A stretch of DNA of 64,000 nt from Ophelia neglecta. Its lineage: Eukaryota. The stretch lies in NCBI GenBank assembly GCA_965285935.1, contig OZ260663.1, positions 87,544,001 to 87,608,000 of the forward strand, read 5' to 3'. Numbering within the stretch: position 1 is the stretch's first letter; each line of letters opens with the position of its first letter. Shown one piece after another: positions 269 to 57,127 of the stretch. The translations under genes and the position numbers were made by a program. The notes under the pieces were generated by a model that worked only from the letters and a program-made list of their open reading frames with translations, was not told the origin of the DNA and did not search any database.

Positions 269-340
269 AATTACCTACCGCTAATAAAGCCTTATAACTG
301 CAGAATTGTACTTACCTAAAACGAAAGAAAAGATCATTAG
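269..340 (-). other. Recursive splice site (junction 316|315) with 37- or 41-nt RS-exon (315-279 or 315-275)
   Basis: Minus strand reads CTAATgatcttttctttcgttttAG|GTAAGTAcaattctGCAGTTataaggctttattagcg|GTAG|GTAATT. A branch-point-like CTAAT lies at 340-336. Confidence 0.72.
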
Positions 341-3300
341 AAATATGTTTAAATCAACAGGTTAAATCGTAATTCTGCATAAAAGTAATTTTAACATGCA
401 TATTCAGAACAATTTAATCCATGAGCATCTCAAAATATATTTAAGATATCATCATAAAGTTTAGGTATCATTTAGTTGTCGTATTGTATTAAAAGGAAAT
501 GACATCACTATCTTTTGGTTGAATTGCATACGTAAATATTACCACGCTTTGTACGATAGTTGATATATTGTTCCCTTACATTTCCTTCCTCGGGGTACAC
601 ATGTGACATTCATTTAATCTTTCACGTGGTTACCAAGTATCTTATTATATAACCATACATTCGTGAAAGATGTTCTACCTAATGCGATAATAGCAACCAG
701 GCTGTCAACGGAAATGAAGAGTAACTAAATGCCAGTATGGCCATATTATATGATACTAGCATGAATAGTTACTCATGTCTTGTCTTGAAATACGGTACAG
801 CAATATCACTGAAACCAATGAGAACCCGGAATGATTCTATAAGCCGTTACTGTATGCATGTAAATTCTACAATTTTCAAAAGGCGAAACCTTGTCTTAAG
901 TTCAATGACCGTCCAACGCAATATAACACTGCTCGTAGATTAATCATGTGCATTCTTATTCCTGATGTACAATCGCGAGGGTACATGCGTTTCAGGCAGG
1001 CAAGGTTATATGGTTGAATCATGATACAGAAATAACAAAGGTAAACCAACGACAAAAGGCTGACCTTTAAAATTATGTATATATCTAATAAACCGAAAAG
1101 CAAAAACAAGTTAAAACCTTACTGAATCACTCTTGCTAATTAACACAATTCGATAAGTACCCCTATCTTTTCTATGGTGATCGCGCAATTTAAAATGTGT
1201 CATAAATTCCATGTAAATCAGAGGCGTCCGAAACTATACGGCGATGTTTTATAGATACTGATTAGAGGAGGCAATTAAAAAACTTCATTACAATGGAATG
1301 TTGAATACGTTATGATATACAAACTAATTAGTACATACTAACATGTGGTGAATAGGAGCGTCTATAAAAGTATTGATACAGGTTTCATGTGGACGATAAC
1401 AAGAGTTGGTTCTAAGAGGTCTTATAATAAAGTGGCTTTTTGTTAAAGCTTAAAAGCCATACCGTTTTTGATATTAGATTAAACATTGTTATTTGGCTTG
1501 TCTACCTAAGTGGGGCTGCGGCTGCTGGTTCCTGACGATCTATGGCTCACTTAATGGTCAATCCTATATTAGTGATTGTTTTGGGTATCCCTCCAAGTTT
1601 TCAGGTGGGTATCCCTTCCCATTTTTGGTGTTGCGTTAATGATGATTTTAGTGGCCTTTATCTGTGCATGTCACTATAAATATATACACATTGTACGCGC
1701 TTGACTTCAGTCGAAATAATGGGAAATACCAACGCGCTGCCTACTGTAATTAAACTGTTTATTGCATTGCTTATAACATAGTTACGATTTATCAGGCGAG
1801 TAGCCTCAAATGGAGTAACAAAATTACAAGTATTCTTGCTTGATTAATGCTTTCAAGTAGGGACCCGGAACTTAATCTTGGATAACGGGCGAATTTTCGC
1901 CATTCTGCTGACTCGGAAACACGACTTTGTAATTGGATTTTCCTCATCGCAGAGTGCAAGCAGGTGCTCAAAAGCGGTATGAATTGAAATGCATTACCTC
2001 TTAAATGGCTATTACATTACGCAGCCAGTGTAAGTGTATGCAGATTGCTTGTCATTGGCTAAACACCATACTTCATAGGCTGGAAGTAATCGTGTATATA
2101 TATATATATCTGCACGTCTGTACCTACCTGACTTGAGTTAAGCTGCATTTGTCGAAATAATAAAACCAGTAATCAAATCTGAACCGTATTGAGGGAACTG
2201 GTGCTGGACAAAAGTGGGTTTTCATGTATCCTATTACTTTATTTTTCAATTAAATGATTTACAAGAGTCGTAAGAAAAAATAATCTTGGGAACGTCAGTT
2301 GCGGCACAGCATACGGCAAACATCATCCCCGTCAGTAAAGGCAAATGTATTAAAAGTTTTCAAAAATAGAGGCAAATCATTTTCAGGAATTAACTATGAG
2401 AGGCAGTCTCAACAGGAATCACCCACCCATTGGTTTACGCAAGACAAATATGAAACACGTCTTTTTTCTAGATTTTATGTCGTTTTTTTTAGTTTCCTGC
2501 TATTGATACTATAATTACTTATTATAATAGTAGGAAACATTCTCGTTGAAAGCCATAATGGATGAGGATATAAAGCATTCTTGTATGCAGATACACTGGC
2601 TTAACGTTCCTTAAAGCGAAAGTCTGCCGAATCCTGCAATGCTTTGACATTTATCGGGTCATCAAGTTCCCGACTAGCAAATGAAATCTATTCTATTGGA
2701 ACGGCAGCAGACCAATCAGTTAAACACAATACTAATTATTATTTTATCATAATAAAACTATATTGAAAAAAATTATATCTGCAATTTCGCGCCAACCTGT
2801 TTCAATATTATTTTTAATGGCTCACTTAATTCATCTCCAAGGCATATAAAACTATTTTGCCCGATTCAATGGTAATTCAATGAGTGGAAAGATGCATCCT
2901 CACTTTTCACACCCTAATGTAATAGATTAAAAGCGTGTTACCTGTTCGTTCACAATCGGTCCGTACAATAGTTTGATTAGTAATTAGTTATATTATAAAT
3001 AGCACGACACCTTGACGTTATATTTGAGGGGCTAGACTGCCTGTATTTCTTGCGAACATGGAAATGATTTATATTTTGTTGCATAAAAATGCACCGGTAT
3101 TTGTTATTAAGCGATGGACTATCATGCATTTCCAGAAGATATATTGGGCTGTATAAAAAAGGCAGCACCCAGATAAAACACACACTCATTGAACTACCAC
3201 AACTTTAAATCATCATGCATTGTTCTAATTCAAGCTAGTCTGGAAGAAACCTACTTCCGTTGATTGGTTACGCACATGATACAATGAGAATGCGTCATAA

Positions 3301-4049
3301 AACAGAAATAAACCAAGAAATGTGATGCAAATTAATTATTTTCTCTCTTCTCGCACTATCAGCACATGTCTGTTAACATGGCAGTTTGGCCATCCATTAT
3401 CGAGTAAAGACATAAAGGTAAGTGAATATAATAAGTAATTGATCACATTCTCTTGTCCGCGCTATTATTCAAGGCTGGGCGTAAGATTTATTTCTGGACA
3501 CAATTTCTACGATATACATTTACTATTTCACAGTACATATACATAATATCAGCAGATGTGAATCGCTATACCTGTGGCTTTGATAGAATGCAGCCCACCA
3601 GGACATGTCAAGAGCTCTGCCGGAAGCGAGATAGCATGGAAGGAAAGTATCACTTAATATACCTGCAAGTCCGGTAGCAACGAGAGTAAAGACTGGTGTA
3701 AAAAATGAGAATGTTACCATCTACACCTGAAGACATAGTTCGACATTGCATTCTGACAGAATACTTGGCAAAGATATCCTGTACGTATTATAAATTACTG
3801 CTAGAAGGAAATGTTTCAAGGTCACAACAAAACCCTACGCCATACATTATTTTCATTTTATAAAATATGTCTGGGTAGTCAAAGAACCTGACATAAACAA
3901 ATTAAACATGGTATCTCTGAAAGCGTTTGTCGAAAGATAAAAGCATTCGTTGTTAAGGCGCTGACAAAGGCCGGAAATCCTGAAAGGATATTTTCTTATA
4001 TACGGACTTTATTTCAGACTAATAAAAACACCGTGTTTATCATTGGAAA

Positions 4050-6000
4050 CTATTCCTTAACTTTTCTTCCTGCGTCATTGATTCATAATGGAATCAAGGG
4101 CTGACCTTTGGTACGACAATGAACCAGTTTTCGAAAAGAAGATAAAGAAATATATTCCAAAAAAAAAGAATAATTCGCACATTGATATCTAGAATTAGGA
4201 GGAGGTAATAATAAGAAATTAACCCAAAGTAATCTATGATGTGAAGCGATGCATGAAAATGATTTTTAAGATATCAGCTTTCTCTAAAACATATTAGATT
4301 CAGCAGTGACATGGTTCATTTACTTACGCCTAGGGAAGTTTCGCATATTAAATAAGAAGGAAATAAGGCCAACTGCCAAATTTTGTCAGATGACATAAAA
4401 CCTACCGACTCGACTTGTAACAAGGAACAAGAACCTATATTTGGATCAATAGTGTTCACGACATCGCCAGTTTTTTTATGCGGATTGTATATACTCTCAG
4501 GGATGGTATCAATCATAGACGGTGGTCTGTTTTCAAAAGTTCATTTTTCTTTAGCATATTAAGTAAGCCGTTACGACCTCAAAATATGACTTTACTGTGG
4601 AATGCATATATGATAAGTACAGTATATATTTTCAGCTTACAAGTTACATAGATATGCCACTGAGTTATATGTTGTGTGTATATCATTTTTCACTTACTAT
4701 GCGGTAGGCTGCATCATATTCTCAAAAGAAAACTTACATTTGAATTTGAACATCAAAACCTTAAAGCCACTTATAACTCATTCACGCCTATACTTTTAAT
4801 AACAAATCACACGCTGCCTGCTGAAATAAGATCGTTTTATTGGCGTGGAGTAGCTAATGAGGTATTTATTATCTAATGTGCATTCTGTGTAAGCACACAT
4901 TTACTGGTAGACAGAGGAATGTTATGGAAAAAGTTTATTTTGTAATCGAGAATTCAGATTAGTGTTCCTGGTAAATATGGTGTGGATAAAATCTTATCAC
5001 TGTCACATGTAGAGCATGGCGTGAAATACTTTCTTGAACAGGCTCAGATTTCACCACCAATTTGATAACCAACACAGACAATAACTCAACCGTTGGATGT
5101 TGCTCTTAACAAAATATCCACATTTTTCACGTTCTTACACATTAATTTACGAGTTTTCGCTATAGATTTTTTTGGATGCCTACTTGGGAGAGGTAATATT
5201 CCAATCAACGCATTGGACACATCGGCCAGTTTGATCAATAATGGTTTTCTTTCCCTTGACAGGCAATTCGTCATGATCAGATGAAAAGTTATTTGAAATT
5301 TTTATGATGAATGGGAGAAGATCTCTTACAAGTGCCAACGATTTTCTCGCATGGATTCACGTTTCTACTCCACTTCATTATTTTTTGGACGCTATCAATA
5401 ACTGCAGATGTTTCGAATGTGCCCGCGTTTGGCACACGACCCCTTCTCATCTTTTTTCAATATTCAGTGTCACAACGAAGTCAGACAGTATACCAATCGT
5501 CTTGCTGACTACCAAGTTATAGCTATTTGATACACTGATTTATAGGTCCACTTAATGGCATTTTTCAAACTGTTTTTTTCTAGAATGTTCCTATGACAAA
5601 CAGTTAATATTTGCCGGATGCTATGTTAAACATTTTAAGAGTCTCAAACATGACGGTCTGAATCATGCTGTGTGAACTTTGGATCAAACGTTCTTAACAA
5701 AGGTCATCGGCTTGTGTGGCCATGCCACCTCGAATGAGTATTATGTTACAAAACAGTGATCCAAATCTATCACCAACCATATGCGGATCACGACGAAAAG
5801 CCACACTCTTTGTAAAGCATCATTCGACTCATTTTCGACAGTAATCTTTGAGAGCAGGAAGCTGAGGCAAGGTCAGTGGTAGAACACACCATCCTAGTAA
5901 GATTGAAACGTATTAATAACTGTCCTCACCGCCCAGTAACACATAATTACGCTTCAGGGCACTGATATATTGGACATTTTTTAATATCTGCAGTAGGAAA
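4050..6000 (-). mobile_element. Highly decayed Ty3/Gypsy LTR-retrotransposon gag-pol relic
   Basis: Minus-strand translations give a gag-like FRRD(P) at ~5784-5799, a zinc-knuckle remnant GSCAKRGHIRNIC at ~5404-5442, ELPVKGK...VDWN at ~5195-5270 (resembles the protease C-terminal end) and SCSLLQVESVGFMSSDK at ~4380-4435 (resembles RT KCxF..VEYLGH.IS). The order is gag-PR-RT. There are many stops and deletions, boundaries are approximate, and no LTRs were recognised. Confidence 0.55.
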
Positions 6001-7065
6001 TAAATCATCTTTTAAGTATGCTGTCAATGCGATTATCTATCAGCGCATGTATCATAAAGTGTCCCTTTAACAGAAGTTATATTACGGGCATTGTATGAGA
6101 TGGCGGAGGGGCAGCTCAATTTAACATATTTATGGCTGAAATAAAAGGGATGGGCTAACCCAAGAGACCCAGGATACATTTTTCGAAGCCATAATCATTC
6201 AGTTCAATAAATTGCAGAGTATGTACAAAATCAAATTTTGAAGTATTTGGTTAATCAGTAGTATAATTGTTAGAAAAAAGAGTCTTCATTTCGTTGTAAA
6301 TTGCATTTTTATGCTTATTTCTTACAAAACAAGTCCTTAGAAACAAATTAATTAACATCTCTCTATCATTTAAAAAAAGAATTACCATTGAACTTGACAC
6401 CTGTCAGTAAAAACTAGGCCTAAATATGAATTGAGCTGCTTACCATGGCAACCACTTGCAGTGTTAAGTTCATTAACGTCTCATAGTATCCATTGACATA
6501 TTAACATTAACGTACTAAACCAAAATAATCTATGTCAAATGTGAGCCGGTATACAGGGATTCATGTTATTTTGTATATCCTTGGTAACAATGGCAACGGG
6601 CAAAAAACTGTCATTTGATACCCATACTACCCTCATGACTTTCCATGGACATTTTGTTTATTATTAGGACATTCAATGTGAACCATGGCTATGGCAGGTC
6701 ATGTGACCAACAAGACGTTGCAATTAAAATCGTTTATATTCCCAGCTCCTAGACTTCTATTAAATGTATGAGATAGAATAGTTACATACATCTGTCTAGG
6801 AGCTCTAGGTTAGGGGCAAGAACCTGAATATATAATATAATTTATTAGTAACTTGCCTATTTAATTCATTAACATATTGGCACCACTCTGCTAAGTAAAC
6901 GTGTTTACTTTTTTCACTGGGAATACAGATTTTGAAGACAGTCGATTCCTTCTCGAGAGCGTGGATTGGGAACCACATATTTATGAGTAACTAGCACCAT
7001 CAACATTTTCCTAACGAACTTGAGTAGAAAAATAACAAAAGTAGATGAAAACATTTAAGTCGGTT

Positions 7066-7200
7066 GGGATAAATTAATGAACTAATAATTGTCACTTACG
7101 CTTTTGACTAAAAGCAACCTTTTTAATATTCTCCCGTGGGGTTAAATTAATGACTAATCAAAAATTAATATCTACTCCTTGGACTTAAATCAACATATTT
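7066..7200 (+). repeat. Diverged tandem duplication, ~73-bp period
   Basis: GGG.TAAATTAATGA(A)CTAAT...TT.GACT.AA..CAAC appears twice. Confidence 0.65.
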
Positions 7201-10200
7201 CAAATCTTTTGATCACAGAAAACTATAAACTCAGTAGACAGGGGCATAACGACTTGGTTACACCGAAGAAATAAAATATAAACGGCTTTCATTTACAAAA
7301 GTAACTTTCCGAACGATGGTTCAACATGCCGCATCTCCAAGTTTAAATTGGAACTTCAATAGAACGTGTGATCGCTCATTTCCGCGAAGACGCTATCGAT
7401 TTCAAAACCTATTTCATGGTTGAATATTATTCCCCGGAGGATACAAAAGCGAATTAAAAGTCCACAACCTTTCTCTGTTGCAGCCGACTGTCATTGTGGA
7501 ATTTCGACTTTCGATCAATGGCCTGGTTTTTTTTATAACCTACTAGGTTTCATTATCGTTTCATATTGCCCGCTTTTTCGATATTTTTTTGTGTGTGTAG
7601 TGGATATGACTGGGGGACACACTATAACGGAAAGCTGACCCAATCCTTTATGTTCCTAGGGAAAACAGTGACGTCGAGGGCTAGGCTCGTAAACTAGGTT
7701 AAGACAAGGGAAAGGACAGATACTTGCCAATCTACTTATTTCAATCCATATCCCTAACTATCATTCTAACATGAAGGGGCTTAGACAGAATGAAGCTTTG
7801 GTAGTATTACACCATTCTTGTTGAGGAAAGGGATTTCGTTTGAAGGATTTCTCCAGCCTACCTTTTCATCAGTATCCTATGATATGCATTGTTATTCATT
7901 TGTTTCATATGAGATATGAGCAGTCTGGTTAATATGCCATGTTATTCCTTCTTTTCACTTGATAACCCCTGCTGTAACAATGAGTATCGGCCGGTTGCAT
8001 GATTACTGATTTAGTCTCAAGATGAATTCTGTATCTTCTTATATTCTTGTAAAATGCAGAGGTTTATAACCAAATATATATATATGCAAAAATTAATAAA
8101 TACACATAGTAAACCAAAGTGTCAAATTGTACTCCAAACGAAAGAAAGTTAGAAAAATCATTCTATTTGAACACCCTTTGTCTATTATAACAATGTAAGT
8201 AGAGTTCTGTCGTATAATATAGCTGATTAACTATTTCGCAATGTTTCGTTATTTTCGTAAATTTGGCTTATATCTGACGTTTGGTAATAAGAGCTAAGCT
8301 GGAAATGAATAAAGACTTATAGACAATACATTTTACCCACCGTGGATTGGCAGGTACTGCTGTACTGACTAGCTACCATATTCTATTTACTTTATTGGTT
8401 ACCCTCCGGTGGAGTCTTCATCATAGCTGGCCACGCTTAAACCACAAGCGATGATGCTATTATGAGCCGCAAAATATGAATAGACCTGGTGTGTGCCTGT
8501 CTAGTTCTATGATATATTGCGCGTTTCAAGAGAATCTTTACATTAAATTGTCATTGCAATTTGGGATCATCAAAAACTAAACAATTTACAGTTAACCTTG
8601 TTCTGCATTAGGTTTCATTTTGCAATAAAACTACAAATGATTTCTTTGAAATAAAACGAGCCACTAATCTTTCACTTCTGCCATTTTAATCAAGTTATTT
8701 TCAAATCATTAAATGAAACCTAGAATGAATTAATTTCCTCCAAATCTGAGAGTGCATAAATGCCGCGCGTCTTTGAATGAAAAATTTTATGCATAAAATA
8801 AAACTGACAGACATACAAAGAAAAAAAAATCAATAATATCCCATCGGTCCAGACACGTATACTGTATGCTATCTAAATGTTTGTATTTAAGTGTTGACGT
8901 TTCGCTAACACTAAATAAAAACCGGTTGTGGATACCCGGCAAACTAAATAAGCTCGTCAGACGACAATATTCGAATAAAACGGTAGAAAACGTCTGGAAC
9001 CGTCAGTTGTATGCCCACGAATATATATCTCTTGTTCTCCAACTCTAAATATGTTACGGAAATGATATCATATTTAATAGTACATTCGCTTTTGTCATAT
9101 GTTGCTTAGAGTATTCCAGTTTATTGTCAAGTGTCAATTACAAGTGTATGACTAAGATCAAGGGGAGGTGAAGGAATTTGAAAAAAAAACAAATAACACG
9201 AACAATATATAACATCATATTACAAGGAACATGGCTACATGTACTTGCAGGGATTAATACAATGTTGTTATTGATTAATATTCGTGCAAATTTTGGCATG
9301 CACTAATATTTAATCAAACGTTAAAGAATAATATATAATCATAGATTTGTGTGGTAGACTACCAACATTCAAAAAGCCGTATTGGAACTAAGTATAAATG
9401 GAATCAACCCATCAAGTGTGCATATCCTCTGTATATTACGCAGCTTTTTTTCGTCGTGTGCAACATTTATCAGCATATGTATGTATAGTTTTCAAGCCGT
9501 AAAGACCTGTCAGTGTATATCAAGATATGTGATGATATCAGGTGTGGAGTACAGGTACTATGGCAACTATGGAGAGGAATGTGTTCTGTAATCAAGTGGA
9601 GCATGTTCTGTCACAGGTGGGTGTGAGCAGTTTTCCACCAATCACTCCAGGGTTGCATATATAAAGTTACAGGATGGCCTGTTACTCGGCAGAGAACGCC
9701 ATGTTATTGTATTTGAAAAAGCAAACAAAACTGCCCACTTCGAACCCCTGATCCTCCCGGTTTCGGTTTGTTTTTCGGCTGTCCCTTTCTCTACCCCCTC
9801 CCCCTCCCCCGGTTCCAGTCGCGCCCGTATTGGCTGATGCCAACTAAAATGCCTTCCATACTCAGGATCATTCATAACATCAGTCCCCCTTGTTATTTCC
9901 CCCACCCTCGCCTCTCCTTGCCAGACACCAAAACCCATCACCACCGCTTAGCCATCTCGTAAAAGGCTCTAAATAAATGAAGTGTAGTTTTATTAGCAGC
10001 GAGCATAGAGCATCCGCCAATTTCAGCCATTGACCCGAAGCCATTACGATGGTGGCGAGTTCGGCTCGCGGGCGCTTTTGTTTTAATGTGTGTATTTTGG
10101 CTTTTTCGCGTCAAATTTGAACACTAAAAGCAAGAAAGAATTATATTCTAATAATCATACAGCAATTTAGCAAATTTTCAACTACAAAGCCTGGGTTCTC

Positions 10201-13200: not shown

Positions 13201-13820
13201 ACAAATCAGGTACGGCTAGACTTTAATTATTGGCTTAATATCATGGTATATCGGTTACTCAATCCACCATATCGCTAGACTAATACATGGAAACAAAATC
13301 TTGATACTAGAAATACTCATCTTTTATAATTTCCGCACGCAACCGCAAATTGCTTTTTATTGTAACTACCATTATGCTAGTTGGCCAATACACCATTTGG
13401 TGGCTGTAGAATACTGTCAAGTATGTAGATGGATATGATGTTAAAATCCTCAGAAGTTTTTATGTTCTATTTCTTCCTGAGGGCGAATAATATGCCTCAA
13501 ATTTAATCGGATTAAATCCACTAAACTACGTTTAAAGTGAGCTATGCTTTAAAATGCACTACACCCTCTGCAGTCAATCGATCAATGTGGCCTTGTTAAT
13601 AATAACTTCGCGACACCATACAAAGTCATTCAGTTTGCTATAATATTGAAAATGTTATTCCTCGCAAAGGGATGAATAATAACACACTATAATTAACAAA
13701 GTTAAATGGTTGTTCTATTTATACCATTCATAGCATTCTTATTGTATCTATCTTGTTTTGAAGGACCACCAACTCTCTTCAAATCCATTTTGTTTGTTTA
13801 CGATGACTGACCAAATTATG

Positions 13821-19054: not shown

Positions 19055-19125
19055 ACTCACCAACTTTAAACCAAACGGAAACTGCAAAATGTTACTTACC
19101 TGAAATAGAAACAACAAAAGTATAA
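19055..19125 (-). other. Recursive splice site (junction 19100|19099) with 39-nt RS-exon 19099-19061
   Basis: Minus strand reads cttttgttgtttctatttcAG|GTAAGTAacattttGCAGTTtccgtttggtttaaagttg|GTGAGT. Confidence 0.75.
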
Positions 19126-36529: not shown

Positions 36530-36600
36530 ACTTACCCTCCCTTTAGAACAAGAAACTGCGAAAGATGTACTTACCTGAAAAGAGGAAAAGCACAAATGAT
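36530..36600 (-). other. Recursive splice site (junction 36575|36574) with 39-nt RS-exon 36574-36536
   Basis: Minus strand reads tttgtgcttttcctcttttcAG|GTAAGTAcatctttcGCAGTTtcttgttctaaagggagg|GTAAGT. Confidence 0.75.
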
Positions 36601-38649: not shown

Positions 38650-39400
38650 TACTTTTCGTATCTCCTGGCTGATTCGAGGGGATAGTATCTTCACCAAACT
38701 GCTGTTTTTCGATTTCAAATTGTAAAACCAATAGTTCTCCATGTCTACCAAGATCAGATGACATGCAGGATGCTCTTTTGTAAATGGTTCCCGTTTGTGT
38801 AGGTCTACTGTGGCAAGTGTGGTAAGAAGCTTTGTAATTCATTATTCAATTTTCCTCTTGGCCTTAATTTACCTTGACAGTGATCAGTGAGGAGGATGTA
38901 TGGTTTGGTCAGTGTGTAGTGACTTGGTTGCAATTGCGCTACAGAAACAGTGTGCCCTGAAATTGTTATTTACCAAAAGCCCGTTAATAGTACACCACTG
39001 GTTATTTATAGTTGAGAGTATTGGAGAATGAAGATCTTTTCCTGGCTGTTGGTGCTCTTAGACCTACATCAATTGAACCAACAGCCATCTACAGAAATCA
39101 AAGATCTCGCACTGCCTTCATTTCCTCGCTGGCATTAGTCATAACAGATTTATAAGCCACAATATTGGTTATATTGCATGATTTTAATGTTCATTAGATT
39201 ATGGCGGCAAGGTAAAGTTCTAAACAGGTTGGTAGTTTCAGCCTTCAGCCAGTAAATGATGTGTAGCGTCCTGTATTTTGTGCTAGTAGCCACAAAGGAA
39301 ATTGGGGAGAACAGAACCCTGAGTGATCAAAACAATAATTGGACTCAGTTGCTGGCTTAAAGACGACATCGTACTAAATAATACATGGCATTCTCAATGT
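38650..39400 (-). mobile_element. Very degenerate LINE RT relic
   Basis: TQGSVLP at ~39303-39324 (cf. PQGSVLSP). The rest is barely recognisable and the extent is uncertain. Confidence 0.33.
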
Positions 39401-46659: not shown

Positions 46660-48150
46660 ACAAAAAAGTGCTAGTTACAGAACTGTTAACATGACTATGA
46701 TATAATTCTTGATATAGGTAGCATAGACTCTCAAACAATGAATGCTCACCTTATGAAGTATGTCATTTGGGCTATCGTTAACAATTCTGACAACACTTTG
46801 TCGTATGCACTTATCTGCGAGTTTGTAAACGGATTTTGCTGGGTATAAAGTAGAGCAGTTCCTGGTATTATGCGACCGGATACATCTATATTGTTGTAAA
46901 TTTTTCTGACAATTTATTGTTTTAAGTTTATGATTAAATTTTAATACGTTTAATTTATATAATTCATTAACATAAAGAAATACTAGGTTCTTCAGAATTT
47001 GCTCGGAATGTGCATTTAATTTGCTGTTAGTAAAGATCTATACTGCCCCTTTCTGCAATTTAGTTATCCTTGAATTTTGAAGACCCCAGGCAAGAATTCA
47101 ATAATTCCTATGATGTAATCTAAGAGTATTGTAAATCGTCACTACAAGAGAGATTGAGGTAGACAATATTTAGTCTGTTTAAAATGCCATTAGCCTTTGA
47201 TATTTTATTTGCCACTTTATGGTCGGGCTTGACCAGTCAATGTTTTTATTTATCAGCAATCCTAAATTAAAATTATCCACAAATTCAATAGAGGTGCCAT
47301 TATTTCTAAATTCCAACTTGGGGATTTTCCTATTCTGGCATAAACATTAGCATGGCCTTAGTTTTTGAAATGTTTAGTGAAAGCTTATTAAGTTTCAGTC
47401 AGCCATTCATTAACTTTCGAAGCTCAAGATTAATATGGCGGCTCACATCTCCAACCACCATGTACAAAGAGGTAAACGTTTGCAAGGTGGTAGTCAATGC
47501 TGTTTCATCAGCATACATGATGGGATAAAATAGGTCACCGACCTTTCAGAGGTCATATGTATAAATAATAAAAAGCAGCGGACCAAGGATTGACCTTTGT
47601 TTCACCCCTGTAACTACATTACTGTGTGTCGACCTTATCCCATCATAGTATGTATATTGTTTCTAGACGAGAGGAGCTGCTAAGTAGATCTAGAGATCGA
47701 GCATTAAGCCCACAAAAATATTTTATGGTAATTCTCCTTTATCAATCTTTTGTGTTACTCAGTCGATAAATTCCAGGGCAATTCAGAGTGCATAGTTCTA
47801 AAACCATATTGGCTATCATTTATAAAAATGTTAGAGTTAAAAAGAGAATACAATTGATTAAAAATGGCTTTTTCGAAAATGTTATAGATTCCTGGAAACA
47901 CTGGTCTATAATTACCCAAAATACATTCGTCATCCTCCTTAAATACAGGGATGATTTTGCTTATCTTAAGCTTATCTGGAAAAACTGAAATAATCGATTG
48001 GTTAATAATACATGTAAGGGGTTCAATGAGTACATATTTTTCTAGTATGAGGATTTTGGTGGACATTCAATCAACTCCGGAACTAGTTTTGGGTTTGAGG
48101 ACATCGATAATTTTAAGAATATCCGCCTGATCAACAGGTTAAAAAGTCAT
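46660..48150 (-). mobile_element. 5'-truncated CR1/L2-clade LINE, ORF2 reverse transcriptase pseudogene through the C-terminus
   Basis: Motifs in order: EPLTCIINQS..FPDKLKISKIIPVFK..NYRP..FEKAIFNQL..QYGFR (48066-47770); GVKQRSILGPLLFIIY and MYADE (~47610-47505); WLKLNKLSLNISKTK; LAWG..RITKLQK..NAHSEQILK..ELYKLNVLKF; HNTRN..ADKCIR..DILHKVSIH..YIKNY. It has frameshifts, stops and an internal deletion at the DLSKAFD region. Confidence 0.92.
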
Positions 48151-48179
48151 TGGTTGGAGGAATTCTTCCTCCAACCAAT

Positions 48180-48420
48180 TACCCCAAACTATCCTGCATA
48201 CCCCACAAGTCCTTTCTCGTAATGCAAACCCATTCCATAGCTCAGCAGTGGTGAATCAAAGCATTATTTTATTCATTGTATCTAAGATCAACCAGAATCT
48301 GGAACCTCCTACTAGTTCAAATTCAAACCGTACCCACCATAACCTCCTTCCAGGCAGCCCTTAAACAGCATTACTTCAGACTATCGCTCAATCCCAGATT
48401 TTTTCTAAAGATATTGTCTG
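48180..48420 (+). mobile_element. 3' end of a second CR1/L2-type LINE
   Basis: YFYSLYLRSTRIWNLLLVQIQTVPTITSFQAALKQHY matches the terminal SFFPRTIR.WN.LP...S...FK..LK motif of LINE ORF2. Confidence 0.65.
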
Positions 48421-51400
48421 TATATAATGTCTGTTTGTCCCGATATGTACCCAGTTATGTTAAATATCTATTTCTTTTCAGTGGTTGCATCATGTTGTAC
48501 TTACATGTACATGTATGTAAAAAGAGCACGTGTGGCTCACCAAACTCCTTTGCCAACCCTCTTCAGAGGATTGAACAAAGAGAACCTGAGAACAGATAGC
48601 TGGCTAATGGCGCACTGGCCTTCAGGATAAGATTAATCAAATGTCACAAAAGCAAACCAATAAAAGGCAGCCTTTACACACCAGTTACACATCGGCAATA
48701 AACGCGTCACCAGTTCCTAATCCACACTGTTCTCTGTCATCGCGATTTGTTTTTTTATTCAGGAAATCTCCAGACTGGCAGCTATTCTGGCGCTAGTTAT
48801 GCCGTAGTTTGAAGAACGTTGACATCGGTGATTAACAACAGCATGTCATTAATAGTAGTATAAAACTTATCAGCTTGTCGAGCATAATTGATTAATTCAG
48901 AGATAATCCCAGGGAGATTTGACAGATGACTGGCAGCTATTCAGGCGGCGCGGGATGATTATGACAGCTAGTATTTGGGTTGTACGCGTCAAGTGAGATT
49001 CGTAGTGCTTACCAATCCATAATAAAATATGTTTAAAACAATGACAGTGGTACAGTCTTAAACCGAAAGTCAGGCATGTCTTTGATGCTAATTGACCATT
49101 TGGTAACTCCTTTCTAAAACTGATGTTATCAAATTTAAACCAAATATCCGGGAACCATAATTATTTTTGGGCAGATAGGACCAACTCTGGAATATTTCAA
49201 TCAATAAATTGATTAAAACAGGAGCAAGATATGTTTTGCAGGCTTTATAAGATTTTGAACTCACAATAGCGGTGGTACCTGAACCTTTATGTAACTGTCT
49301 AACCTAAACACGTTGATAGCAATATATCCATACGGTTCTCAGTGAGGAGAGACTTATCAAATAGGATTTTGGAAAACACTTAAGCAGTTTAAACCCATGT
49401 TGCTGCAAATTTATTAAAGTATTTCACTAGGGGGCTACTTAAAAGCCAAAACGGAAGTAAATATATACACAATTTAATGAGATTGAGATTTAATTGATTG
49501 AACTAAGGACAATCTTTGTAAGCGGCATAAAACAAAAAGTCGGACACCATAGATAATGAGAAAAACCGAAATGAACGCAAAACAAATACACAGACACCCC
49601 TCCGGAGGCCTGGAAGAATAATAAAGACCGGAACGGCTCCTCTGACGGCAATGAATTATGAAATAATACACAAGAGTCGGTGATTGTCTGCAGGAAAAAA
49701 ACTGATTGCAATGCTCTCTCAGATAATAACTATTGACAGGGTTTATTTCGGAGTCCTTTTCCCCGAAACACAGTTTTACGTTGCAGAGAAGATATAGGGG
49801 AAGCGTACTCTGGCAGACAGAACAAAATCAGTTTAGAAAAATAAATATTCTAAATGTACAGAATAAATCAAAAACCGACCGCTGCAGGTCCCTAAAGGTA
49901 ACATTTAAGCAGAAGGTAACGTTGAACTATAAAGCAATAGACAAATCCAACGACTACATATAAATCACATTAAGGGCTTATTCACATGATGGCTTAGATT
50001 AACCACAAGTCACGACACGTGGGAAAAAACAACCGCGGAAATATATCACTATATCGATACATTTATAAGACAAACAGCCCCGGGAGTTTATACCCTGAAG
50101 ACAGAGCAACATCGTTAATCAATGATAGGCCATTTAATCGGTAAGAGTTAGAAGCCAGCCGCTGCAGCCCAACATACACCAATTCACAGATACCCAACAG
50201 TAAATAAACTTGTACAAAAATCTATAAGTAAAACGTAAAATTGATATCACTTGCAATGAGAAGTAGTTCACAGATTTCCACGATGCCAGTCAGAGTACAA
50301 AACAAACAATACAATGGTTAACATGGGGCAGGGATAAAATATGCCATGCGATGGACTAAGCTCTCCCATAACTATGAGACTGAAAATTAATTGGCCTCAA
50401 TATACACGACAGAAGATGTGTGTGTGATTTACACACAAAAGGAAACAACTACAATTACAATTCAATAATAAGTGATCCAGTAAAAATATCATAGCTTGGT
50501 GTAAACGGCAAAAGCGAAAACAGCTGTAATCTCTAAGAATCAGCTATTATGAACATTTGGTGTGCCCTTAGCCGTTTATTAAAAGTTCAAAATGGGGATA
50601 TATGGATGAAATTTAGGTAATAAATTGAATGATGCTGCATTATTCTTATAATCGATGTAATATGGAACAAATACGGAGCATAATGTTCAGCCCACACGGG
50701 CAGGGAACACCCCTGAGTAATGTGATCTGATAGAATGTAGGGGTGCACGATTGAGGCTTCCGAAAGTAAGTCATCTAAGTAGCAAATTTGAATGAACGCA
50801 AAGGGATACCAAAATACCAAATACGATCTCTATAATTTCTATTGAGTCATTTGTGACAATGCCAATAAGGGGTGCACTCACACAAAAAGGCCTTTTTTGT
50901 TCTTGTGTGTTAGTAAATAATCATCATATAATGCTACATTCCAATTATTATGTTGGTCCCTATATCTAGGAAAATCACCTTGGTTATTTGAGGACCAACA
51001 AAGAAACTGATCCATCCAATTAACTATCTAAAACAAAATATCGACAAGATACCGACATAGCTTAAATTCAGCATTATGTTTTTAGCACTGTTCGACAGAT
51101 TTAGTGTGCAATTTATTGATGTGTCCTTAACTGAGACACTGAATACGATATGAAGTTGTTATTATTCAATAGTATGCGGTTGTATGCGTGACTGTTTATT
51201 AATTAATCTCAAATGACCTGACCGCAGCGATGCAATGTCTGATTTAAAGTATGTGGATTTAGTAAAACTGTAATCCACTGGAGCGCCTATACATCTTGGG
51301 GTTAACTTTAAGACGCATGAATCTATAGGTTAGTATAATAAATCGCTAGTCAAACTTAGGCATGACTGAGTCATTATGATTCATCAAGCCTGGGCATATA

Positions 51401-52849
51401 CGGTGAAGTTGGATTACTTTTGTGAAACATGCCAAGAAGTGAGCTGAACGTTAAACATTACTCAAATTGGTACTTTGTTCTATGAATGGAGGAATTTAAT
51501 ACCGCTCAAAACCACGCTACATCCAGCAACCAGCCGAAAAACTGCATGATACTTCAGAAGGTCCCGGCAAATGTCAAGTGAATACTTGATAGCATTTGCA
51601 GTCCTAAAGAGATTTTTACAGCTCAAACAAGAAACGCCTCCAAACATAAGACCCGCGAAGCTGTTAAGGAACGTGATTGAATTATGGTAAACGGGAAACG
51701 TGCGTAGACTGAACAGAATATAAAGAAATTAATTATGCAATTAACCCACTTGCTAAAAATTGAAACAGCATTCTGTTTAAAACAAGCTATGATTTATACT
51801 TCAGTCACTATTTCGGTTAGCTTGGCATAAAATACTTGTAGGACTCGCTTACACCGTAGGTTGTTTGCAGGAATTACTCAAGTGTGTGCAAATAAGTCAT
51901 ACCTCAGGCGTTGGCAAGGGTGAATACAATTACTCTGCCGCATTTTTAGCACGGCCATGCGTTGACTCGTACATTCTCTGTACTTTATGCAGCAATAATT
52001 GGAAAATAAGTGCGATTCGTTCGATTGTTTACCACAATACTATGCTTCATGTTTCCCAATATATGTGTGATAGACCATCCAACAGGAACATTTGTAATAA
52101 CTCAAGATTTATTTACCTTAACCCTAAAATCTTTGTTGTGTGTTTGATAAATTGATGGTATAAATTCCACTGCATTGTTTTAGGACATATATTTTTCGTT
52201 TCCTTCGATTGTTTTTGGTAAAAAAATTCCTACAATTTCTATTCGGAACCTTAAAGCAGTAGAGAGATAAGCAAATAAAGGTCCACAAGCTAAAACAATA
52301 AATGGCGAACTAGATGTTCCCATAGCATCCCACATATCAGCTTAGCGTTAAGGTATTTCAAACTGTCTTGGGATTTTGAACAATAGTAATTGGTTGAATA
52401 AATATTGAAATAAATGCTGCAAAAACATTCAAAATTTAGAAGAATCGTGAGATACAAATTAAAACAGTTTGTATAATAACAAAAGCAAGATTTGGATGTG
52501 ATTGGCAATAACTGCAACCATTCAAGATATTTGTGCAAGATAAAACTTGTTTTACAAATTGTCTGATAGAATATACATATATGCAAATATGTAAATATAG
52601 TCCAATTTATGTCAACTACTAATGGTAATCCATTAAGTGCAAGGGGGAAATTAATGGAGCAGACATGCCCATTAGCCCAAAGTCAAAGGATGCACTGTAT
52701 TGTATGCCCAAGTAATAGATTTTAGGCCAAAGTGCAATATTGAACGTTTCGAAGGCTATTACAGCGCAATATTATTTCTACAAAAGTCAATTGTGTCATA
52801 ATTCAACTTTCTTTCTTAATTTCCAGTGAGAGTGGCATGTAATATATAT

Positions 52850-53035
52850 TGTATGGTGGATGGATGCAGGCTATTATGCTTCAGCGCTTCTTGTTGATAC
52901 ACCTTGCCACATTCCTGAAGTTTATATCCTGCCAGCTTAGAAACCGTATTCGCGCAGTCAAGTATAGGTAAACAAAGTATCCTATAAGCCTTGTTCCCCA
53001 CTTTTTTAGATTTATGTCTAATAAACCACCAAGAC
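52850..53035 (-). mobile_element. CR1/L2-type LINE ORF2 fragment (post-RT region)
   Basis: FIRHKSKKVGNKAYRILCLPILDCANTVS resembles GFIRRN..VK..AY..LVRP.LEYA.TVW. Confidence 0.6.
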
Positions 53036-56000
53036 GATTTCAGTCATATGTCAAACGTTTAGGGTTCAATGGACTTGACCCTAAGAGATAAAAAAAAAGA
53101 AGCCAAACAATATACCACGCAATCGAAATACATCAAATAAATAAATACAAGCTGGTATCACCGGCAAAGAGAATTAGTCAACAATTTACCAGAGTAAGCT
53201 TCAAAGCGTTCCGGGATAAGATTATTGGAGTTCCCAGTTTGGAAATTCCCCTCGTAGTCCTTTCAATAACCTAGCCCCAACAGGCAGTCGCCCGGTCCTG
53301 AAACACTAACAATTTTAGTCCACCGGTTTAGAAATTCTAGTATGATGGGAATCAGTTCTCGAAGGTATGTTTATTAAATCTCAATCTCAAAATACTGTTT
53401 TTACTCTCCAGGGACTCACAAAATGTATACACTGCTCGAAATAGTTTACTTTTTCTTCTATTAATCAGTCGGTATTGCATGTTATAACATTTTCATCACA
53501 TTCGGCAATGGAATTAAAACCTCAGCGAATGACAAGCCCCAACGCGAAAATCCCAGTTTTCTAGTAAGAAGGAGATTAATTGGAGTCTTGTCCGCGGAGG
53601 GACAAAAAACCTGACAATCTCCCGATCATAAACCAAAATGGCGATCAAGTCGCCTGCCATCTGTAGGCGTCTCACGCGTCTGCACGCTAGTCACGTGTTG
53701 GTGGAGACACTTTTGTTGTTAGCTCCACAAAATCCATGGTTGACTCTTCTTGGGAGTATTTAATCTCACACCCTCATTGACTACTGACTATTTGTCTTGT
53801 GGTTTGACATCAGGGATAAATGTAAGTTGGCATAAAATGTTACCTGATATACCGAATTATACTTTATCACTATATTTGCCTGTGTGATAGGTATCGACTC
53901 CCGTGTTTTCACTAATTTTGTGATGCAATGAAACATTACAACCGGCCAGCTAATATCACTGATGGCGTATAAGTTAAAATGCGTTTATGTTAAGCCTTTC
54001 ATCGAATCTTATTGATTGTGGTAAAAATGTCTGTTTGTGCGGTGTGCTACGATTTATTTGACCAGTTCTCGTCTAGACGCATGTTTCTAAGGAAACAATA
54101 AATAAAAATGTTTGGTTTCTACACCACTTTCTGGCACAACTGAAGTCAACGGGCTTCTTTTAATCTAATGTCTTGTTAACACGGCAGCTGAAGCCGACAA
54201 ATAGAAACGGAAAACTATGATTAATGTGTCTAATGTCTGCATGTGATCCCAGCATATTAGAGCTGGCACAGGCATTGCATTGAGAATTATATTCCCGTAC
54301 AATAACCCAAACCATAACCCTTGCCGGAACACAGGCAGAACCTACTCAGGGCCCCCCACTACAACCATACCAGAAAAATAGCCGCCCTCTCTTCATATTG
54401 TTATATCAAACAAAATGGGGGCTACTGCCGGTCACCAGAACAAATTGATACCATCTGCGGGATAATAATTCATAGTAAACTGACATCGGATAGTTATGGA
54501 TCCCCCTTGTACATGTGCTCAACCACATTGAATCTGCAAGCTAACACTCGTACAAGAGTTTATTTTAACAACATTGGCGTAAAAAATGCGCTCTTATTTC
54601 CTAGCCAGCTGGCAGATCTATGAGCAAGCAGAATGTAATTCGCTGCATCAGTGCAGCGTATACGGGGCTTATTTGTCTACATTGGGTCAATACAAGGTTG
54701 TCCGCTACACAAAGATCCACATAATGGTGTCTAGGAAATGTTCAGATGACAATCAGCCAAGAAGTATAACTACTTATCTGCTGTTATGAGGATATTTAAC
54801 CAGCCAGATAGAAGTGGTATTAGAGCAGGAATTCATCACAACATATTGGTGGGTACTCTCGTAAATACGCATAACATATAATCTCCTTATACATGAAGCA
54901 AGGGGTCATCATCCAAATCTTCTCACAAACTTAATTACTACATATTATTTTGGCGATGGCGGTGGGCATTTAATGTGACCATGTATTAAAATACGATAAG
55001 ATAAATCAAGGTTTTGTTTGATGAGAATTGTGCGATTTGTTATGGACACTTTGTAAGAGTCCCGAAATGTTCATTTCATTTTTCGAATCTATGGGTTGCT
55101 TCGGGGCTAAAACTATTCTCCATGACAAGATGCAATTGACTCACCTACTGAAATAAATGTCACTTGAAGAACAAATAGTATGTGTTCGGAACAATTTTTA
55201 CCGCTAGAGTTTTGTCCACTGTATACAATTGCAACTGGCTACACGGGCATTTAATATGAATCCAAAGATTATACATATTGCTAAGTCTTCGGCAAGATTT
55301 TGCCCCAGGCTAGTTTAATCATCTCATCTAAGTGCGCTATTTTTACCCTCAAATCTGATTTATTTCACTCGTATTAACCTGTTTGGTACTAAAAAAGAAA
55401 ACCGGTGTGCAATACATGGAAGGAAAGAAGCACACACTATTTGTCTTCCCGGGCCTAATGACAAGAGCAGCTAATGCTACATAGGTTTCCGCATATATCT
55501 CAATGGTGGCTGGTATGTATACGCGACTTGGCGCTGATACGTTCGTATGCAGCCACATGCAAGATTCCTAGGCAGGTGGTGTTATCGCCTAGCCATCCCT
55601 TGACAGAGCGGGTCAGGAGGCCGGGCAGCTTGTGTCTATGAATCCATTTGTAATTGATATCAGTTTAGGGGGCACACAGGTTTTGATTCTGATCGGAATA
55701 TATTTTCAGTAGCTGAAACTCTATACAGAAACTCATGCTGTAAAACAACACAAGTAACGGTATCAGCTAGCCACACACTGCTTGTAACGAAAAACTTCCT
55801 TGTGACGGTATCTTTAAATTGCGAATGCATACAATAAAGTAAAAGCAAACTATTTGTTTACTCTAAATGGGGGTTTTCTGGATTCATGAATTATGAGTGA
55901 GCGTAATCACTCAGGTTATATTGAGAATGGTCAAGCTGATCAGCCTGTGGGAGATTGGTCTAAGGAGTACAGTGCGAAACCAGGTTCCACACGAATGGAG

Positions 56001-57127
56001 CAGCAGCGAATCTTTGGGAACACCGGCGCCAAACACACTTGTTGCAGCTAATGATTTGAAATTTGCTCCGACTTCTGGTGACGGCTGGTCTTTCTAGTTA
56101 TTATTATTCCGTCTGCTATTCAATGTTTAATATTCACTGTATGGGACACCTGGAGTCAATTTTTAACGTTTAAGTTGATCTCAAAATGGACTCAAGCCAA
56201 TGTAACATGCAGTATGTACACAATCTTGCATAAGTGTTATATACTCCTGCTTTGAAATGAATATGCTCATGAGAGGTAGTGCACCATACTGGTTCTTTCC
56301 GATATTCATTTAATAGATAATGCATTTGTGTATGAATATCGTTATATTTCACATATATGTATGTGTTTTATATGTTGACAAGCGCTTGTAGGCAAAAGAA
56401 GAGCTACACGTGTGTTAGATCTTAACTGAATTGCTAACTTCTTTACATATTGAATATAACAACTGGATATTTGCTAAGAAGGCATTTAAATATATGACGC
56501 GCTAGGTTTATAAAGCAATACATTAAAACGTGTGAAGGCAACCAGAAAATGGTCTAATCTTATCAGTTATATTTCCGCTCCGTTGTAATTTGGCTTGCTG
56601 CCTGGGAAGCGTTCGAACTACATAGCTCTGTTCAACATTTGCGTAATAAGCTGTAAATTAAATTACCATTGCAGCAATTAACTATAAAATAAAGTCGGCG
56701 ATAAAGCCGGGCAACTAAACTGATAGATGTGACGTGCCCGTGTTCGTTTCTGGAAGAATGCACTTGCAAAACGCTATATAGCACTATATGTAGTGTTACT
56801 AAACACTATTTTCACGGTATTTGGACACAATTCTCTCGTAAACATAACAGCTCTTCTTTATTCTTGCATACTGATGTGAAATAATGTAGTAAAACAGTAA
56901 TATGCAAAACAGGTTCCATTCAATTCTTGTAGTGGCTGGGACCTTGCGTTCTCAACCATTCGTAGGGTACCTGGATTCTGATTCGTCACAAACGGGCATG
57001 TTAACATTACTTAAAGAGGGATATAAGATGCGTTGGAAAAAAATAATTGAATATTATCATGCACTAGAAGTCAGCTCACTGTTTTTCGTATGTATTTTTG
57101 TGGACAAATTGCATAAAAAGAACTTAC

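What the first reader, a model, noticed from the sequence alone, without database searches (positions are those of the whole stretch)
269..57127. Evenly spaced ladder of recursive splice sites through a >57-kb intron
Seen: three polypyrimidine-YAG|GTAAGTA junctions at 36574, 19099 and 315, all on the same strand as the exon donor at 57127. They cut the intron into segments of about 20.6, 17.5 and 18.8 kb. By eye I found no equally strong plus-strand junction. Established: 3'ss|5'ss juxtapositions in long introns are the ratchet points of recursive splicing, characterised mainly in Drosophila and vertebrates. Inference: this intron is removed stepwise, apparently in a different invertebrate lineage, and the near-constant spacing hints at a length limit of about 20 kb per splicing step.
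Basis: partly seen in the sequence, partly recalled or inferred. Interest (0 to 1): 0.9.

Follow-up and report, generated by a model that had tools for sequence, protein, structure and literature searches.

The report
Candidate recursive-splice ladder, PKA-C distal intron
Five near-perfect "acceptor fused to donor" splice signals, each followed by a tiny cryptic exon, sit on one strand about every 20 kb in what looks like the 136-kb first intron of a protein kinase A catalytic-subunit gene. They match the recursive-splicing sites known from fruit flies, but no RNA data exist to show they are used.

Summary
The three minus-strand Y-tract-AG|GTAAGTA junctions (first intron base 36574, 19099, 315) are real. 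3 matches were found against 0.04 expected from shuffles, and none lies on the plus strand.

With 120 kb of flanks the ladder grows to five sites, adding window-relative 65665 and -20392. They are the five top-scoring of 1168 AG|GT positions. Each has:
- TT at -5/-6;
- a 37-94 nt AG-free zone upstream;
- a second 5' splice site 37-41 nt downstream.

This is the fly ratchet point plus cryptic RS-exon layout.

The host is most likely a PKA catalytic-subunit gene. Two distal alternative first coding exons have phase-1 donors: 1a at 76451 and 1b at 57254, the latter conserved in marine metagenome contigs. The only good phase-1 acceptor exon in the next 137 kb is PKA exon 2.

No RNA run exists for this organism, so use of the sites is inferred.

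The "20 kb limit" is not supported. The last step would be 59 kb, other ladders in this genome are spaced 29-58 kb, and even subdivision is already described in flies.

The scan has noted other recursive-site candidates elsewhere in this genome (THOC2, RYK, ephrin).

Verdict: a credible new example of a known mechanism, probably in a spiralian animal.

The parts
57128..57254 (-). Alternative first coding exon 1b. It runs from the ATG at 57254 and encodes 42 codons plus 1 nt, so the donor is in phase 1. The intron starts with GT at 57127.
   Evidence: The peptide is 74-79% identical in ENA marine-metagenome contigs. Conservation runs exactly from the ATG to TTCT|GTRAGT, with mostly synonymous changes.
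36575..36600 (-). Ratchet point 1, acceptor half: pyrimidine tract and CAG, with TT at -5/-6 and a 76-nt AG-free zone upstream.
36536..36574 (-). Cryptic RS-exon 1 (39 nt). It begins with GTAAGTA, the regenerated donor, carries GCAGTT at 36554-36559, and is followed by GTAAGT at 36535. It has a stop codon in the exon-1b reading phase.
19100..19125 (-). Ratchet point 2, acceptor half: pyrimidine tract and CAG, TT at -5/-6, a 94-nt AG-free zone, and CTTAT branch-like motif at -27.
19061..19099 (-). Cryptic RS-exon 2 (39 nt). It begins with GTAAGTA, carries GCAGTT at 19080-19085, and is followed by GTGAGT at 19060. It has an immediate stop codon in the exon-1b phase.
316..341 (-). Ratchet point 3, acceptor half: pyrimidine tract and TAG, TT at -5/-6, a 59-nt AG-free zone, and CTAAT at -25.
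279..315 (-). Cryptic RS-exon 3 (37 nt, or 41 nt with the next GT). It begins with GTAAGTA, carries GCAGTT at 296-301, and is followed by GTAGGT at 278. It has a stop codon in the exon-1b phase.

Best explanation
These are intronic recursive splice sites (ratchet points with cryptic RS-exons) of the fly type.

The gene, transcribed on the minus strand, is a cAMP-dependent protein kinase catalytic-subunit (PKA-C) gene with at least three alternative first coding exons:
- 1a, at window-relative 76451-76343;
- 1b, at 57254-57128;
- the canonical myristoylation-type exon (MGNAATAKKG...), at -74290.

All three have phase-1 donors that fit the phase-1 acceptor of exon 2 at -79234.

Proposed path: a transcript from a distal exon is spliced to the first AG at a ratchet point. 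The site is recognised by exon definition, through U2AF on the strong pyrimidine tract and U1 on the 5' splice site 37-41 nt downstream. That splice places the first exon directly in front of GTAAGTA, a regenerated donor. The donor is then used for the next step, so the roughly 136-kb intron is removed as 20.6 + 17.5 + 18.8 + 20.7 + 58.8 kb pieces. For exon 1a the pieces would be 10.7 + 29.1 + 17.5 + 18.8 + 20.7 + 58.8 kb. If the RS-exon donor is used instead, the short exon is included and destroys the reading frame.

Shown here: the motifs, their statistics, their architecture, conservation of exon 1b, and the PKA exons. Inferred: transcription through the region, the exon 1 to exon 2 join, and actual re-splicing.
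For: - Five sites rank as the top five of 1168 AG|GT positions in 184 kb. All are on the minus strand, and each has a strong 5'ss 37-41 nt downstream.
- Within the window there are 3 matches against 0.04 expected.
- TT at -5/-6 is present in 5 of 5 sites. This is the hallmark of 99.5% of fly ratchet points (10.1101/006163).
- AG-exclusion zones are 37-94 nt against a background median of 13 nt, and YTNAY branch-like motifs lie at -25 to -48.
- RS-exon inclusion would give a stop codon (3 sites) or a frameshift (2 sites). Fly cryptic RS-exons behave the same way (PMC8605326).
- The sites are not a repeat. Their flanks are unrelated, and the composite motif occurs nowhere else in the 762-Mb genome.
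- Genome-wide, the cassette pattern gives 59 hits against 5 in the control. About 22 are non-repeat, and 14 of those lie in five same-strand ladders.
- Strict ratchet motifs form 12 same-strand pairs within 70 kb, against 2 opposite-strand pairs and 0.34 expected.
- Host gene: exon 1b is a conserved coding exon that ends exactly at its donor.
- The only well-scoring phase-1 internal exon in the 137 kb downstream is PKA exon 2.
- The downstream exons match PKA C-alpha residues 36-78 and Pkinase.
- Alternative 5' exons joined to exon 2 are the rule for PKA-C genes (PMC3625193).
- Exon 1a shares the N-terminal M[SN][DE][IL]FGK[IL]F with exon 1b, which accounts for the site at 65665.
Against: - There is no RNA evidence of any kind. 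Only three DNA-type runs hold the locus.
- Conservation of the sites could not be tested. The one related contig reaches 7.2 kb upstream and 10 kb downstream of exon 1b and shows no site there.
- In a simple weight matrix the regenerated donor (TCT|GTAAGTA) does not outscore the RS-exon donors. In flies the ratchet donor usually wins.
- The raw genome-wide count of the strict motif equals its reversed control (95 vs 97; 9 vs 8). Support therefore comes from clustering and architecture, not from abundance.
- A conserved independent ORF lies on the same strand between the ladder and PKA exon 2. The ladder could belong to its 5' UTR intron instead.
- Exon 1a has no detected homologue.
Confidence: 0.7

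Rival explanations
1. The 37-41 nt units are ordinary expressed cassette or poison exons. They would be included in a share of distal-promoter transcripts to send them to nonsense-mediated decay or to alter the 5' region. Zero-length re-splicing would be minor or absent.
For: - Their downstream donors score as well as or better than the regenerated donor once exon 1b's last bases (TCT) are in front.
- All five disrupt the reading frame.
- Vertebrate RS-exons are often included (PMC8605326, introduction).
Against: Five independent exons that all begin with GTAAGTA, with perfect U1 complementarity to +7, are not expected unless the regenerated donor is selected for. The interiors are not coding and are poorly similar. 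Even in this case the first splice creates a recursive donor, so this is a variant of the same mechanism.
Confidence: 0.13
2. The sites are recursive splice sites, but they belong to another transcript. One candidate is a long 5' UTR intron of the independent ORF at -66786 to -67946. Another is a non-coding RNA. In either case they would not belong to distal PKA-C isoforms.
For: - The ORF lies on the same strand, 46 kb downstream of the last site.
- It has an acceptor-like AG 29-30 nt upstream of its ATG in both this genome and the related contig.
- It is conserved at 50% identity.
Against: - Exon 1b is a conserved coding exon with a phase-1 donor.
- In the related contig an in-frame stop lies 5 codons upstream of the ORF's ATG, and the candidate acceptor there sits 30 nt upstream of the ATG, which would put exon 1b out of frame.
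- The ORF's acceptor is weak.
- PKA exon 2 is by far the best phase-1 acceptor exon.
Confidence: 0.15
3. The elements are strong U1-binding or decoy sites. They would protect a very long intron from premature cleavage and polyadenylation (telescripting) or from cryptic splicing, and would never be used for re-splicing.
For: GTAAGTA is the best possible U1 target. The sites are spread along the intron at regular distances.
Against: This does not explain the fused strong acceptor, the TT at -5/-6, the long AG-free zone or the second donor at a fixed 37-41 nt. All of these are acceptor or exon-definition features.
Confidence: 0.05
4. The sites are a chance cluster or relics of a repeat, with no function.
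For: Genome-wide, the bare motif is no more frequent than its reversed control.
Against: - 3 matches against 0.04 expected in the window.
- 4 of about 22 non-repeat genome-wide cassette hits fall within 86 kb on one strand.
- The flanks share no homology.
- The composite motif is unique to this locus.
Confidence: 0.02

Closest known systems
Drosophila intronic ratchet points with cryptic RS-exons, for example luna (108-kb intron, five ratchet points), kuz, Ubx and Bx
   Same: - Y-tract-TTNCAG|GTAAGT junction in the sense orientation in a very long intron.
- TT at -5/-6.
- A short, non-conserved, frame-breaking cryptic exon with its own downstream donor.
- Several sites per intron, and segments of about 18 kb on average (10.1101/006163; PMC8605326).
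- A tendency to split introns into similar pieces (PMC6110457).
   Different: - The organism is not a fly. It is probably a spiralian marine invertebrate, but this is unverified.
- RS-exons here are shorter and much more uniform (37-41 nt against about 50 nt and variable).
- Four of the five carry a second acceptor-like motif (Y-rich spacer plus GCAGTT or GCAACT) at +15 to +21 that is found nowhere else in this genome.
- The regenerated donor is not clearly stronger than the RS-exon donor.
- Strict-consensus sites number a few dozen in this genome, not hundreds.
- There is no RNA evidence.
Vertebrate recursive splicing through RS-exons (Sibley et al. 2015, as summarised in PMC8605326)
   Same: Recognition of the site through exon definition with a downstream donor. 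Competition between the regenerated and RS-exon donors. Poison effect if the exon is included. Host genes are long.
   Different: In vertebrates only a handful of fully suppressed intronic sites are known, usually one per intron. Here there are five in series, and the motif is the extended fly-type consensus.
PKA catalytic-subunit genes with alternative 5' exons spliced to exon 2 (human PRKACB: about 160 kb, exons 1-1 to 1-4 plus the short exons a, b and c; PMC3625193)
   Same: Several first coding exons spread over more than 100 kb upstream of a common exon 2. The N-terminus varies while the kinase core is constant.
   Different: The papers I read do not mention recursive sites for PKA genes. 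The distal N-termini here (MSDIFGKIF..., MNELFGKLF...) were not matched to any named isoform.

Membership tests
Recursive splice site (fly-type ratchet point with cryptic RS-exon) | Juxtaposed strong 3' splice site and 5' splice site (Y-tract-YAG|GTRAGT) on the sense strand | tested here: met
   Five sites, the top five of 1168 AG|GT positions, all on the minus strand.
Recursive splice site (fly-type ratchet point with cryptic RS-exon) | TT at positions -5 and -6 of the acceptor (99.5% of fly ratchet points, 10.1101/006163) | tested here: met
   5 of 5 sites.
Recursive splice site (fly-type ratchet point with cryptic RS-exon) | A downstream 5' splice site that defines a short cryptic exon (about 50 nt in flies, PMC8605326) | tested here: met
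   A strong GTRAGT or GTAGGT lies 37, 39, 39, 40 and 41 nt downstream.
Recursive splice site (fly-type ratchet point with cryptic RS-exon) | Location inside a long intron of a gene transcribed in that direction | tested here: inconclusive
   A conserved coding first exon with a donor lies upstream, and PKA exon 2 is the only good phase-1 acceptor downstream. Transcription itself has not been observed.
Recursive splice site (fly-type ratchet point with cryptic RS-exon) | The cryptic exon disrupts the reading frame if included | tested here: met
   A stop codon in 3 sites and a length not divisible by 3 in the other 2.
Recursive splice site (fly-type ratchet point with cryptic RS-exon) | The regenerated donor is stronger than the RS-exon donor | tested here: inconclusive
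   The intronic parts score equally (4.7 against 3.9-6.0). With exon 1b's TCT in front, the simple matrix favours the RS-exon donor. The matrix ignores +7/+8 pairing.
Recursive splice site (fly-type ratchet point with cryptic RS-exon) | Exon-to-ratchet-point junction reads, saw-tooth intron coverage and lariats | not testable with these tools
   No RNA run holds the locus. Only three DNA-type runs are listed.
Recursive splice site (fly-type ratchet point with cryptic RS-exon) | Evolutionary conservation of the junction against a non-conserved intron | tested here: inconclusive
   The related contig L019 covers only -7.2 to +10 kb around exon 1b and has no site. The metagenome motif scan was empty. 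Three attempts to read further along that contig failed.
PKA catalytic-subunit gene (host) | Kinase-core exons orthologous to PKA C-alpha | tested here: met
   The Gly-loop exon matches PKA C-alpha residues 36-78 at E = 4e-17, well ahead of AKT. Pkinase hits were found on the catalytic-loop exons.
PKA catalytic-subunit gene (host) | Alternative first exons joined in frame to a common exon 2 | tested here: inconclusive
   The donors of 1a, 1b and the canonical exon, and the acceptor of exon 2, are all in phase 1. The joins themselves were not observed.

The most novel reading that the evidence does not exclude
Fly-type recursive splicing, with multi-site and evenly subdividing ladders, operates in a non-arthropod (spiralian) animal. 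It would therefore be ancestral to protostomes or bilaterians rather than a fly speciality. In this gene the ladder also carries its own cassette signature: a fixed 37-41 nt RS-exon with an internal Y-rich/GCAGTT pseudo-acceptor unique in the genome. That signature would point to a gene-specific factor, or a duplication origin, that sets whether distal-promoter PKA-C transcripts are completed or poisoned.
Probability: 0.3. Interest if true: 0.65.

Novelty: new member of a known kind. Interest (0 to 1): 0.5.

Why it matters
Recursive splicing has been shown experimentally almost only in Drosophila (hundreds of sites) and vertebrates (few). I found no paper in the held library that links it to molluscs.

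A five-step ladder with the full fly architecture in a distant invertebrate has two implications. The mechanism, and its exon-definition logic, may be old and widespread. And long-intron genes in such genomes could be mis-annotated or mis-spliced if these sites are ignored.

The locus also gives a concrete, testable case. It has four to five steps, a known upstream coding exon, and a well-known kinase as host. The same genome holds at least four other same-strand ladders.

The even spacing adds no new principle. Flies already show subdivision into 'bite-sized' pieces.

Tried and rejected
- RNA evidence: the look-up of sequencing runs returned no RNA run. DNA contigs cannot show splicing.
- Repeat or duplication origin of the ladder: alignment of +/-150 nt and segment-against-segment blastn found no collinear homology beyond the 60-70 nt cores.
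- Conserved RNA structure in the cassettes: RNAalifold gave -2.6 kcal/mol, so none.
- Conservation in relatives: the motif scan of JGI metagenome contigs was empty. Contig L019 does not reach far enough. Three guessed ORFs used to walk along it are not on record.
- Continuation of exon 1b into the 399-codon open frame at -66747: rejected. In the related contig the frame is closed 5 codons upstream of the conserved ATG, and the spacing breaks the phase.
- Homologues of that ORF gave only two anonymous metagenome proteins, no Pfam family and no further exons.
- Exon 1a: no homologue found.
- A sixth site where the spacing predicts one, near -40 kb: none. A 38-bp satellite starts there.
- CpG profile for promoters: uninformative.
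- The bacterial promoter scan was irrelevant to this eukaryotic locus.
- A broad literature search for recursive splicing in spiralians returned nothing relevant.
Full report
**Observation**

A pyrimidine tract and YAG are followed at once by GTAAGTA, which starts at 36574, 19099 and 315. The upstream exon donor TTCT|GTAAGT is at 57127.

- TTNYAGGTAAGTA occurs 3 times in the window against 0.04 +/- 0.2 in dinucleotide shuffles. All three are on the minus strand.
- The window is G000:C5:87544001-87608000.
- I added 100 kb on the low side and 20 kb on the high side.
- In these 184 kb there are two more sites of the same kind on the same strand, at window-relative 65665 (C5:87609665) and -20392 (C5:87523608).
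- A simple acceptor-plus-donor weight matrix ranks the five as numbers 1-5 of 1168 AG|GT positions on both strands. The next candidates are clearly weaker.

**Anatomy**

- All five sites have T at -4, -5 and -6.
- The stretch upstream is free of AG for 37-94 nt, against a background median of 13 nt. YTNAY or CTAAT branch-like motifs lie at -25 to -48.
- Each is followed, 37, 39, 39, 40 or 41 nt downstream, by a second good donor: GTAAGT, GTGAGT or GTAGGT.
- Read in the phase of exon 1b, three of these short units contain a stop codon. The other two have lengths not divisible by three.
- The flanks of the sites are unrelated. No collinear similarity links the 17-21 kb segments, so this is neither a dispersed repeat nor a recognisable segmental duplication.
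- No conserved RNA structure was found.

Four of the five sites share a pyrimidine-rich spacer and GCAGTT (GCAACT in one) at +15 to +21. The composite AGGTAAGTA-N7-8-GCARYT has 8 matches in the whole 762-Mb genome. Four are these sites, and the other four match the background rate of 3 seen in the control. I cannot explain this element. It looks like a second small acceptor, and the real acceptor of PKA exon 2 also reads TTTGCAG|TT. It could also be a pyrimidine-tract-binding silencer that favours skipping of the RS-exon. That is speculation.

**Host gene**

Exon 1b (57254-57128) encodes 42 residues plus one base.

- Two protein clusters from ENA marine metagenomes, including Tara Oceans assemblies, match exon 1b at 74-79% identity over its whole length.
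- In the DNA alignment, conservation starts at the ATG and stops at the donor, and differences are mostly synonymous.
- Exon 1b is therefore a real, conserved, coding first exon with a phase-1 donor.

Downstream on the same strand lie PKA catalytic-subunit exons:

- a canonical first exon, MGNAATAKKGDPEN (-74290), with a phase-1 donor;
- exon 2, KAFLAQAKEDFNKKWEEPAQ (-79234 to -79295), with a phase-1 acceptor;
- the Gly-loop exon (-86539 to -86667);
- three tandem alternative versions of the catalytic-loop exon.

The Gly-loop exon matches PKA C-alpha residues 36-78 at E = 4e-17. The loop exons hit Pkinase.

I scanned the 137 kb downstream of exon 1b for internal exons with a good acceptor, an open phase-1 frame and a good donor. 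At strict thresholds the scan returns PKA exon 2 alone. At relaxed thresholds PKA exon 2 is the best candidate. PKA-C genes are known to use several 5' exons joined to exon 2; human PRKACB spans about 160 kb (PMC3625193).

A scan for ATG-to-phase-1-donor units found a further candidate first exon, 1a, at 76451-76343. Its first nine residues, MNELFGKLF, parallel the MSDIFGKIF of exon 1b. It lies 10.7 kb upstream of the site at 65665 and explains why a ratchet point exists upstream of exon 1b. No homologue of 1a was found.

**A complication**

An independent conserved ORF of 386 codons, starting MCWVC, lies on the same strand at -66786 to -67946, between the ladder and the canonical PKA promoter.

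- It has 50% identity to a metagenome protein and no Pfam family.
- In the related contig the frame is closed just upstream of its ATG, so it is not the continuation of exon 1b.
- The ladder could still serve a long 5' UTR intron of this gene. I rate that at about 0.15.

**Genome-wide context**

- The bare strict motif is no more frequent than its reversed control: 9 vs 8 and 95 vs 97.
- Its occurrences cluster by strand. There are 12 same-strand pairs within 70 kb, against 2 opposite-strand pairs and about 0.34 expected.
- The full cassette pattern (TTNYAG|GTAAGT, then 24-60 nt, then GGTRAGT) has 59 matches against 5 in the control.
- After removing tandem repeats by eye, about 22 remain. Fourteen of them fall in five same-strand ladders: C2:18.75 Mb, C5:14.04 Mb, this locus, C8:80.4 Mb and C12:65.06 Mb.
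- This locus has the most sites.
- RS-exon lengths elsewhere are 34-65 nt; here they are 37-41 nt.
- The scan has already noted recursive-site candidates on other DNA of this genome, in THOC2, RYK, ephrin and Kv2. Those notes are unchecked. My pattern searches independently recover one of them, at C5:14.035 Mb.

**Spacing**

The four consecutive intervals from the exon 1b donor are 20,552, 17,475, 18,784 and 20,708 nt, with a coefficient of variation of 0.07. With the two ends fixed, three random points give so even a division in 5 of 10,000 trials. The evenness is real for this stretch, but it is not a 20-kb ceiling.

- The remaining distance to PKA exon 2 is 58.8 kb, with no further site or strong acceptor.
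- Exon 1a transcripts would take steps of 10.7 and 29.1 kb.
- Other ladders in this genome show gaps of 29-58 kb between detected sites.
- In flies, segments average 18 kb (+/- 9 kb, range 2.6-63.6 kb), and luna has five ratchet points in 108 kb (10.1101/006163).
- Fly recursive sites are already reported to divide introns into similar 'bite-sized' pieces (PMC6110457).
- A 38-bp satellite of 166 copies begins 20.0 kb after the last site. I could not tell whether that is a coincidence.

**Mechanism proposed**

The mechanism is as in flies (PMC8605326). The site is recognised as a tiny exon. The upstream exon is joined to the AG. The regenerated GTAAGTA donor then competes with the RS-exon donor. 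Use of the former continues the ratchet and leaves no trace in the mRNA. Use of the latter includes a frame-breaking exon.

One departure from the fly pattern: with exon 1b's last bases (TCT) in front, my simple matrix does not rank the regenerated donor above the RS-exon donors. Some inclusion, giving unproductive transcripts, cannot be excluded.

**Limits**

- No RNA run holds the locus.
- Conservation of the sites could not be tested.
- The organism is not identified. The close relatives in marine metagenomes and other agents' unchecked notes ('probably annelid', 'mollusc-like') suggest a spiralian. The parallel I draw with Aplysia PKA isoforms rests only on my memory.

**Verdict**

The recursive-splicing reading is well supported by sequence but unproven. 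The 20-kb limit is not supported. This is a new member of a known kind, of moderate interest.

Noticed in passing
L011:3506-5415 (window-relative -96.5 kb to -94.6 kb, minus strand): Three tandem, mutually similar versions of the PKA-C catalytic-loop exon (...RFYA.QIVL..EYLH.LD..YRDLKPEN...). Each has its own acceptor and donor, so they are presumably mutually exclusive exons.
   Followed up: partly
L008:2054-3214 (window-relative -66786 to -67946, minus strand): An independent 386-codon ORF starting MCWVC, Ser/Arg/Asn-rich, with no Pfam family. It is 50% identical to an anonymous ENA metagenome protein (P0001, contig L014). It sits on the same strand between the ladder and the canonical PKA promoter.
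   Followed up: partly
L006:3314-9593 (window-relative -46686 to -40407): A 38-bp satellite with 166 copies over 6.3 kb, free of CpG. Its gene-proximal edge lies 20.0 kb downstream of the last ratchet point, where the spacing would predict a sixth site.
   Followed up: partly
L013:2343-2451 (window-relative 76451-76343, minus strand): A candidate more distal first coding exon, 1a (MNELFGKLFKKDK..., phase-1 donor T|GTAAGTAA). It shares its first nine residues' pattern with exon 1b. No homologue was found in the protein collection.
   Followed up: partly
G000:C5:14035651, 14074725 and 14114378 (+); C12:65058764, 65099441 and 65128786 (+); C2:18706546, 18750415 and 18785831 (+); C2:81702072, 81739378 and 81760967 (+); C9:7386404, 7408289 and 7450260 (-); C8:80339973 and 80398455 (-): Other same-strand ladders of ratchet-type motifs in this genome. 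The C5:14.04 Mb ladder is also very evenly spaced, at 39,074 and 39,653 nt.
   Followed up: no
G000:C5:11141403/11180480 and C5:14035646/14074720: Two pairs of ratchet-type motifs 3 Mb apart have almost the same spacing (39,077 and 39,074 nt) although the motif sequences differ. This could be coincidence or an old duplication.
   Followed up: no
L012:276-312 (window-relative 64312, minus strand): A weaker acceptor|donor-like site (TTTTTGCAG|GTGTGG) with a GTAAGG donor 36 nt downstream, 1.35 kb after the ratchet point at 65665.
   Followed up: no
L020-L023 (ENA contigs, including Tara Oceans assemblies): Exon 1b of a close relative (79% amino-acid identity) turns up in four independent marine metagenome assemblies. 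The relative is therefore an abundant marine, probably planktonic or larval, animal.
   Followed up: no
window:57524-57994 (-): A 157-codon ATG ORF just upstream of exon 1b with no credible family hit (ADAMTS_C at E = 0.057 only). It is probably not coding.
   Followed up: partly
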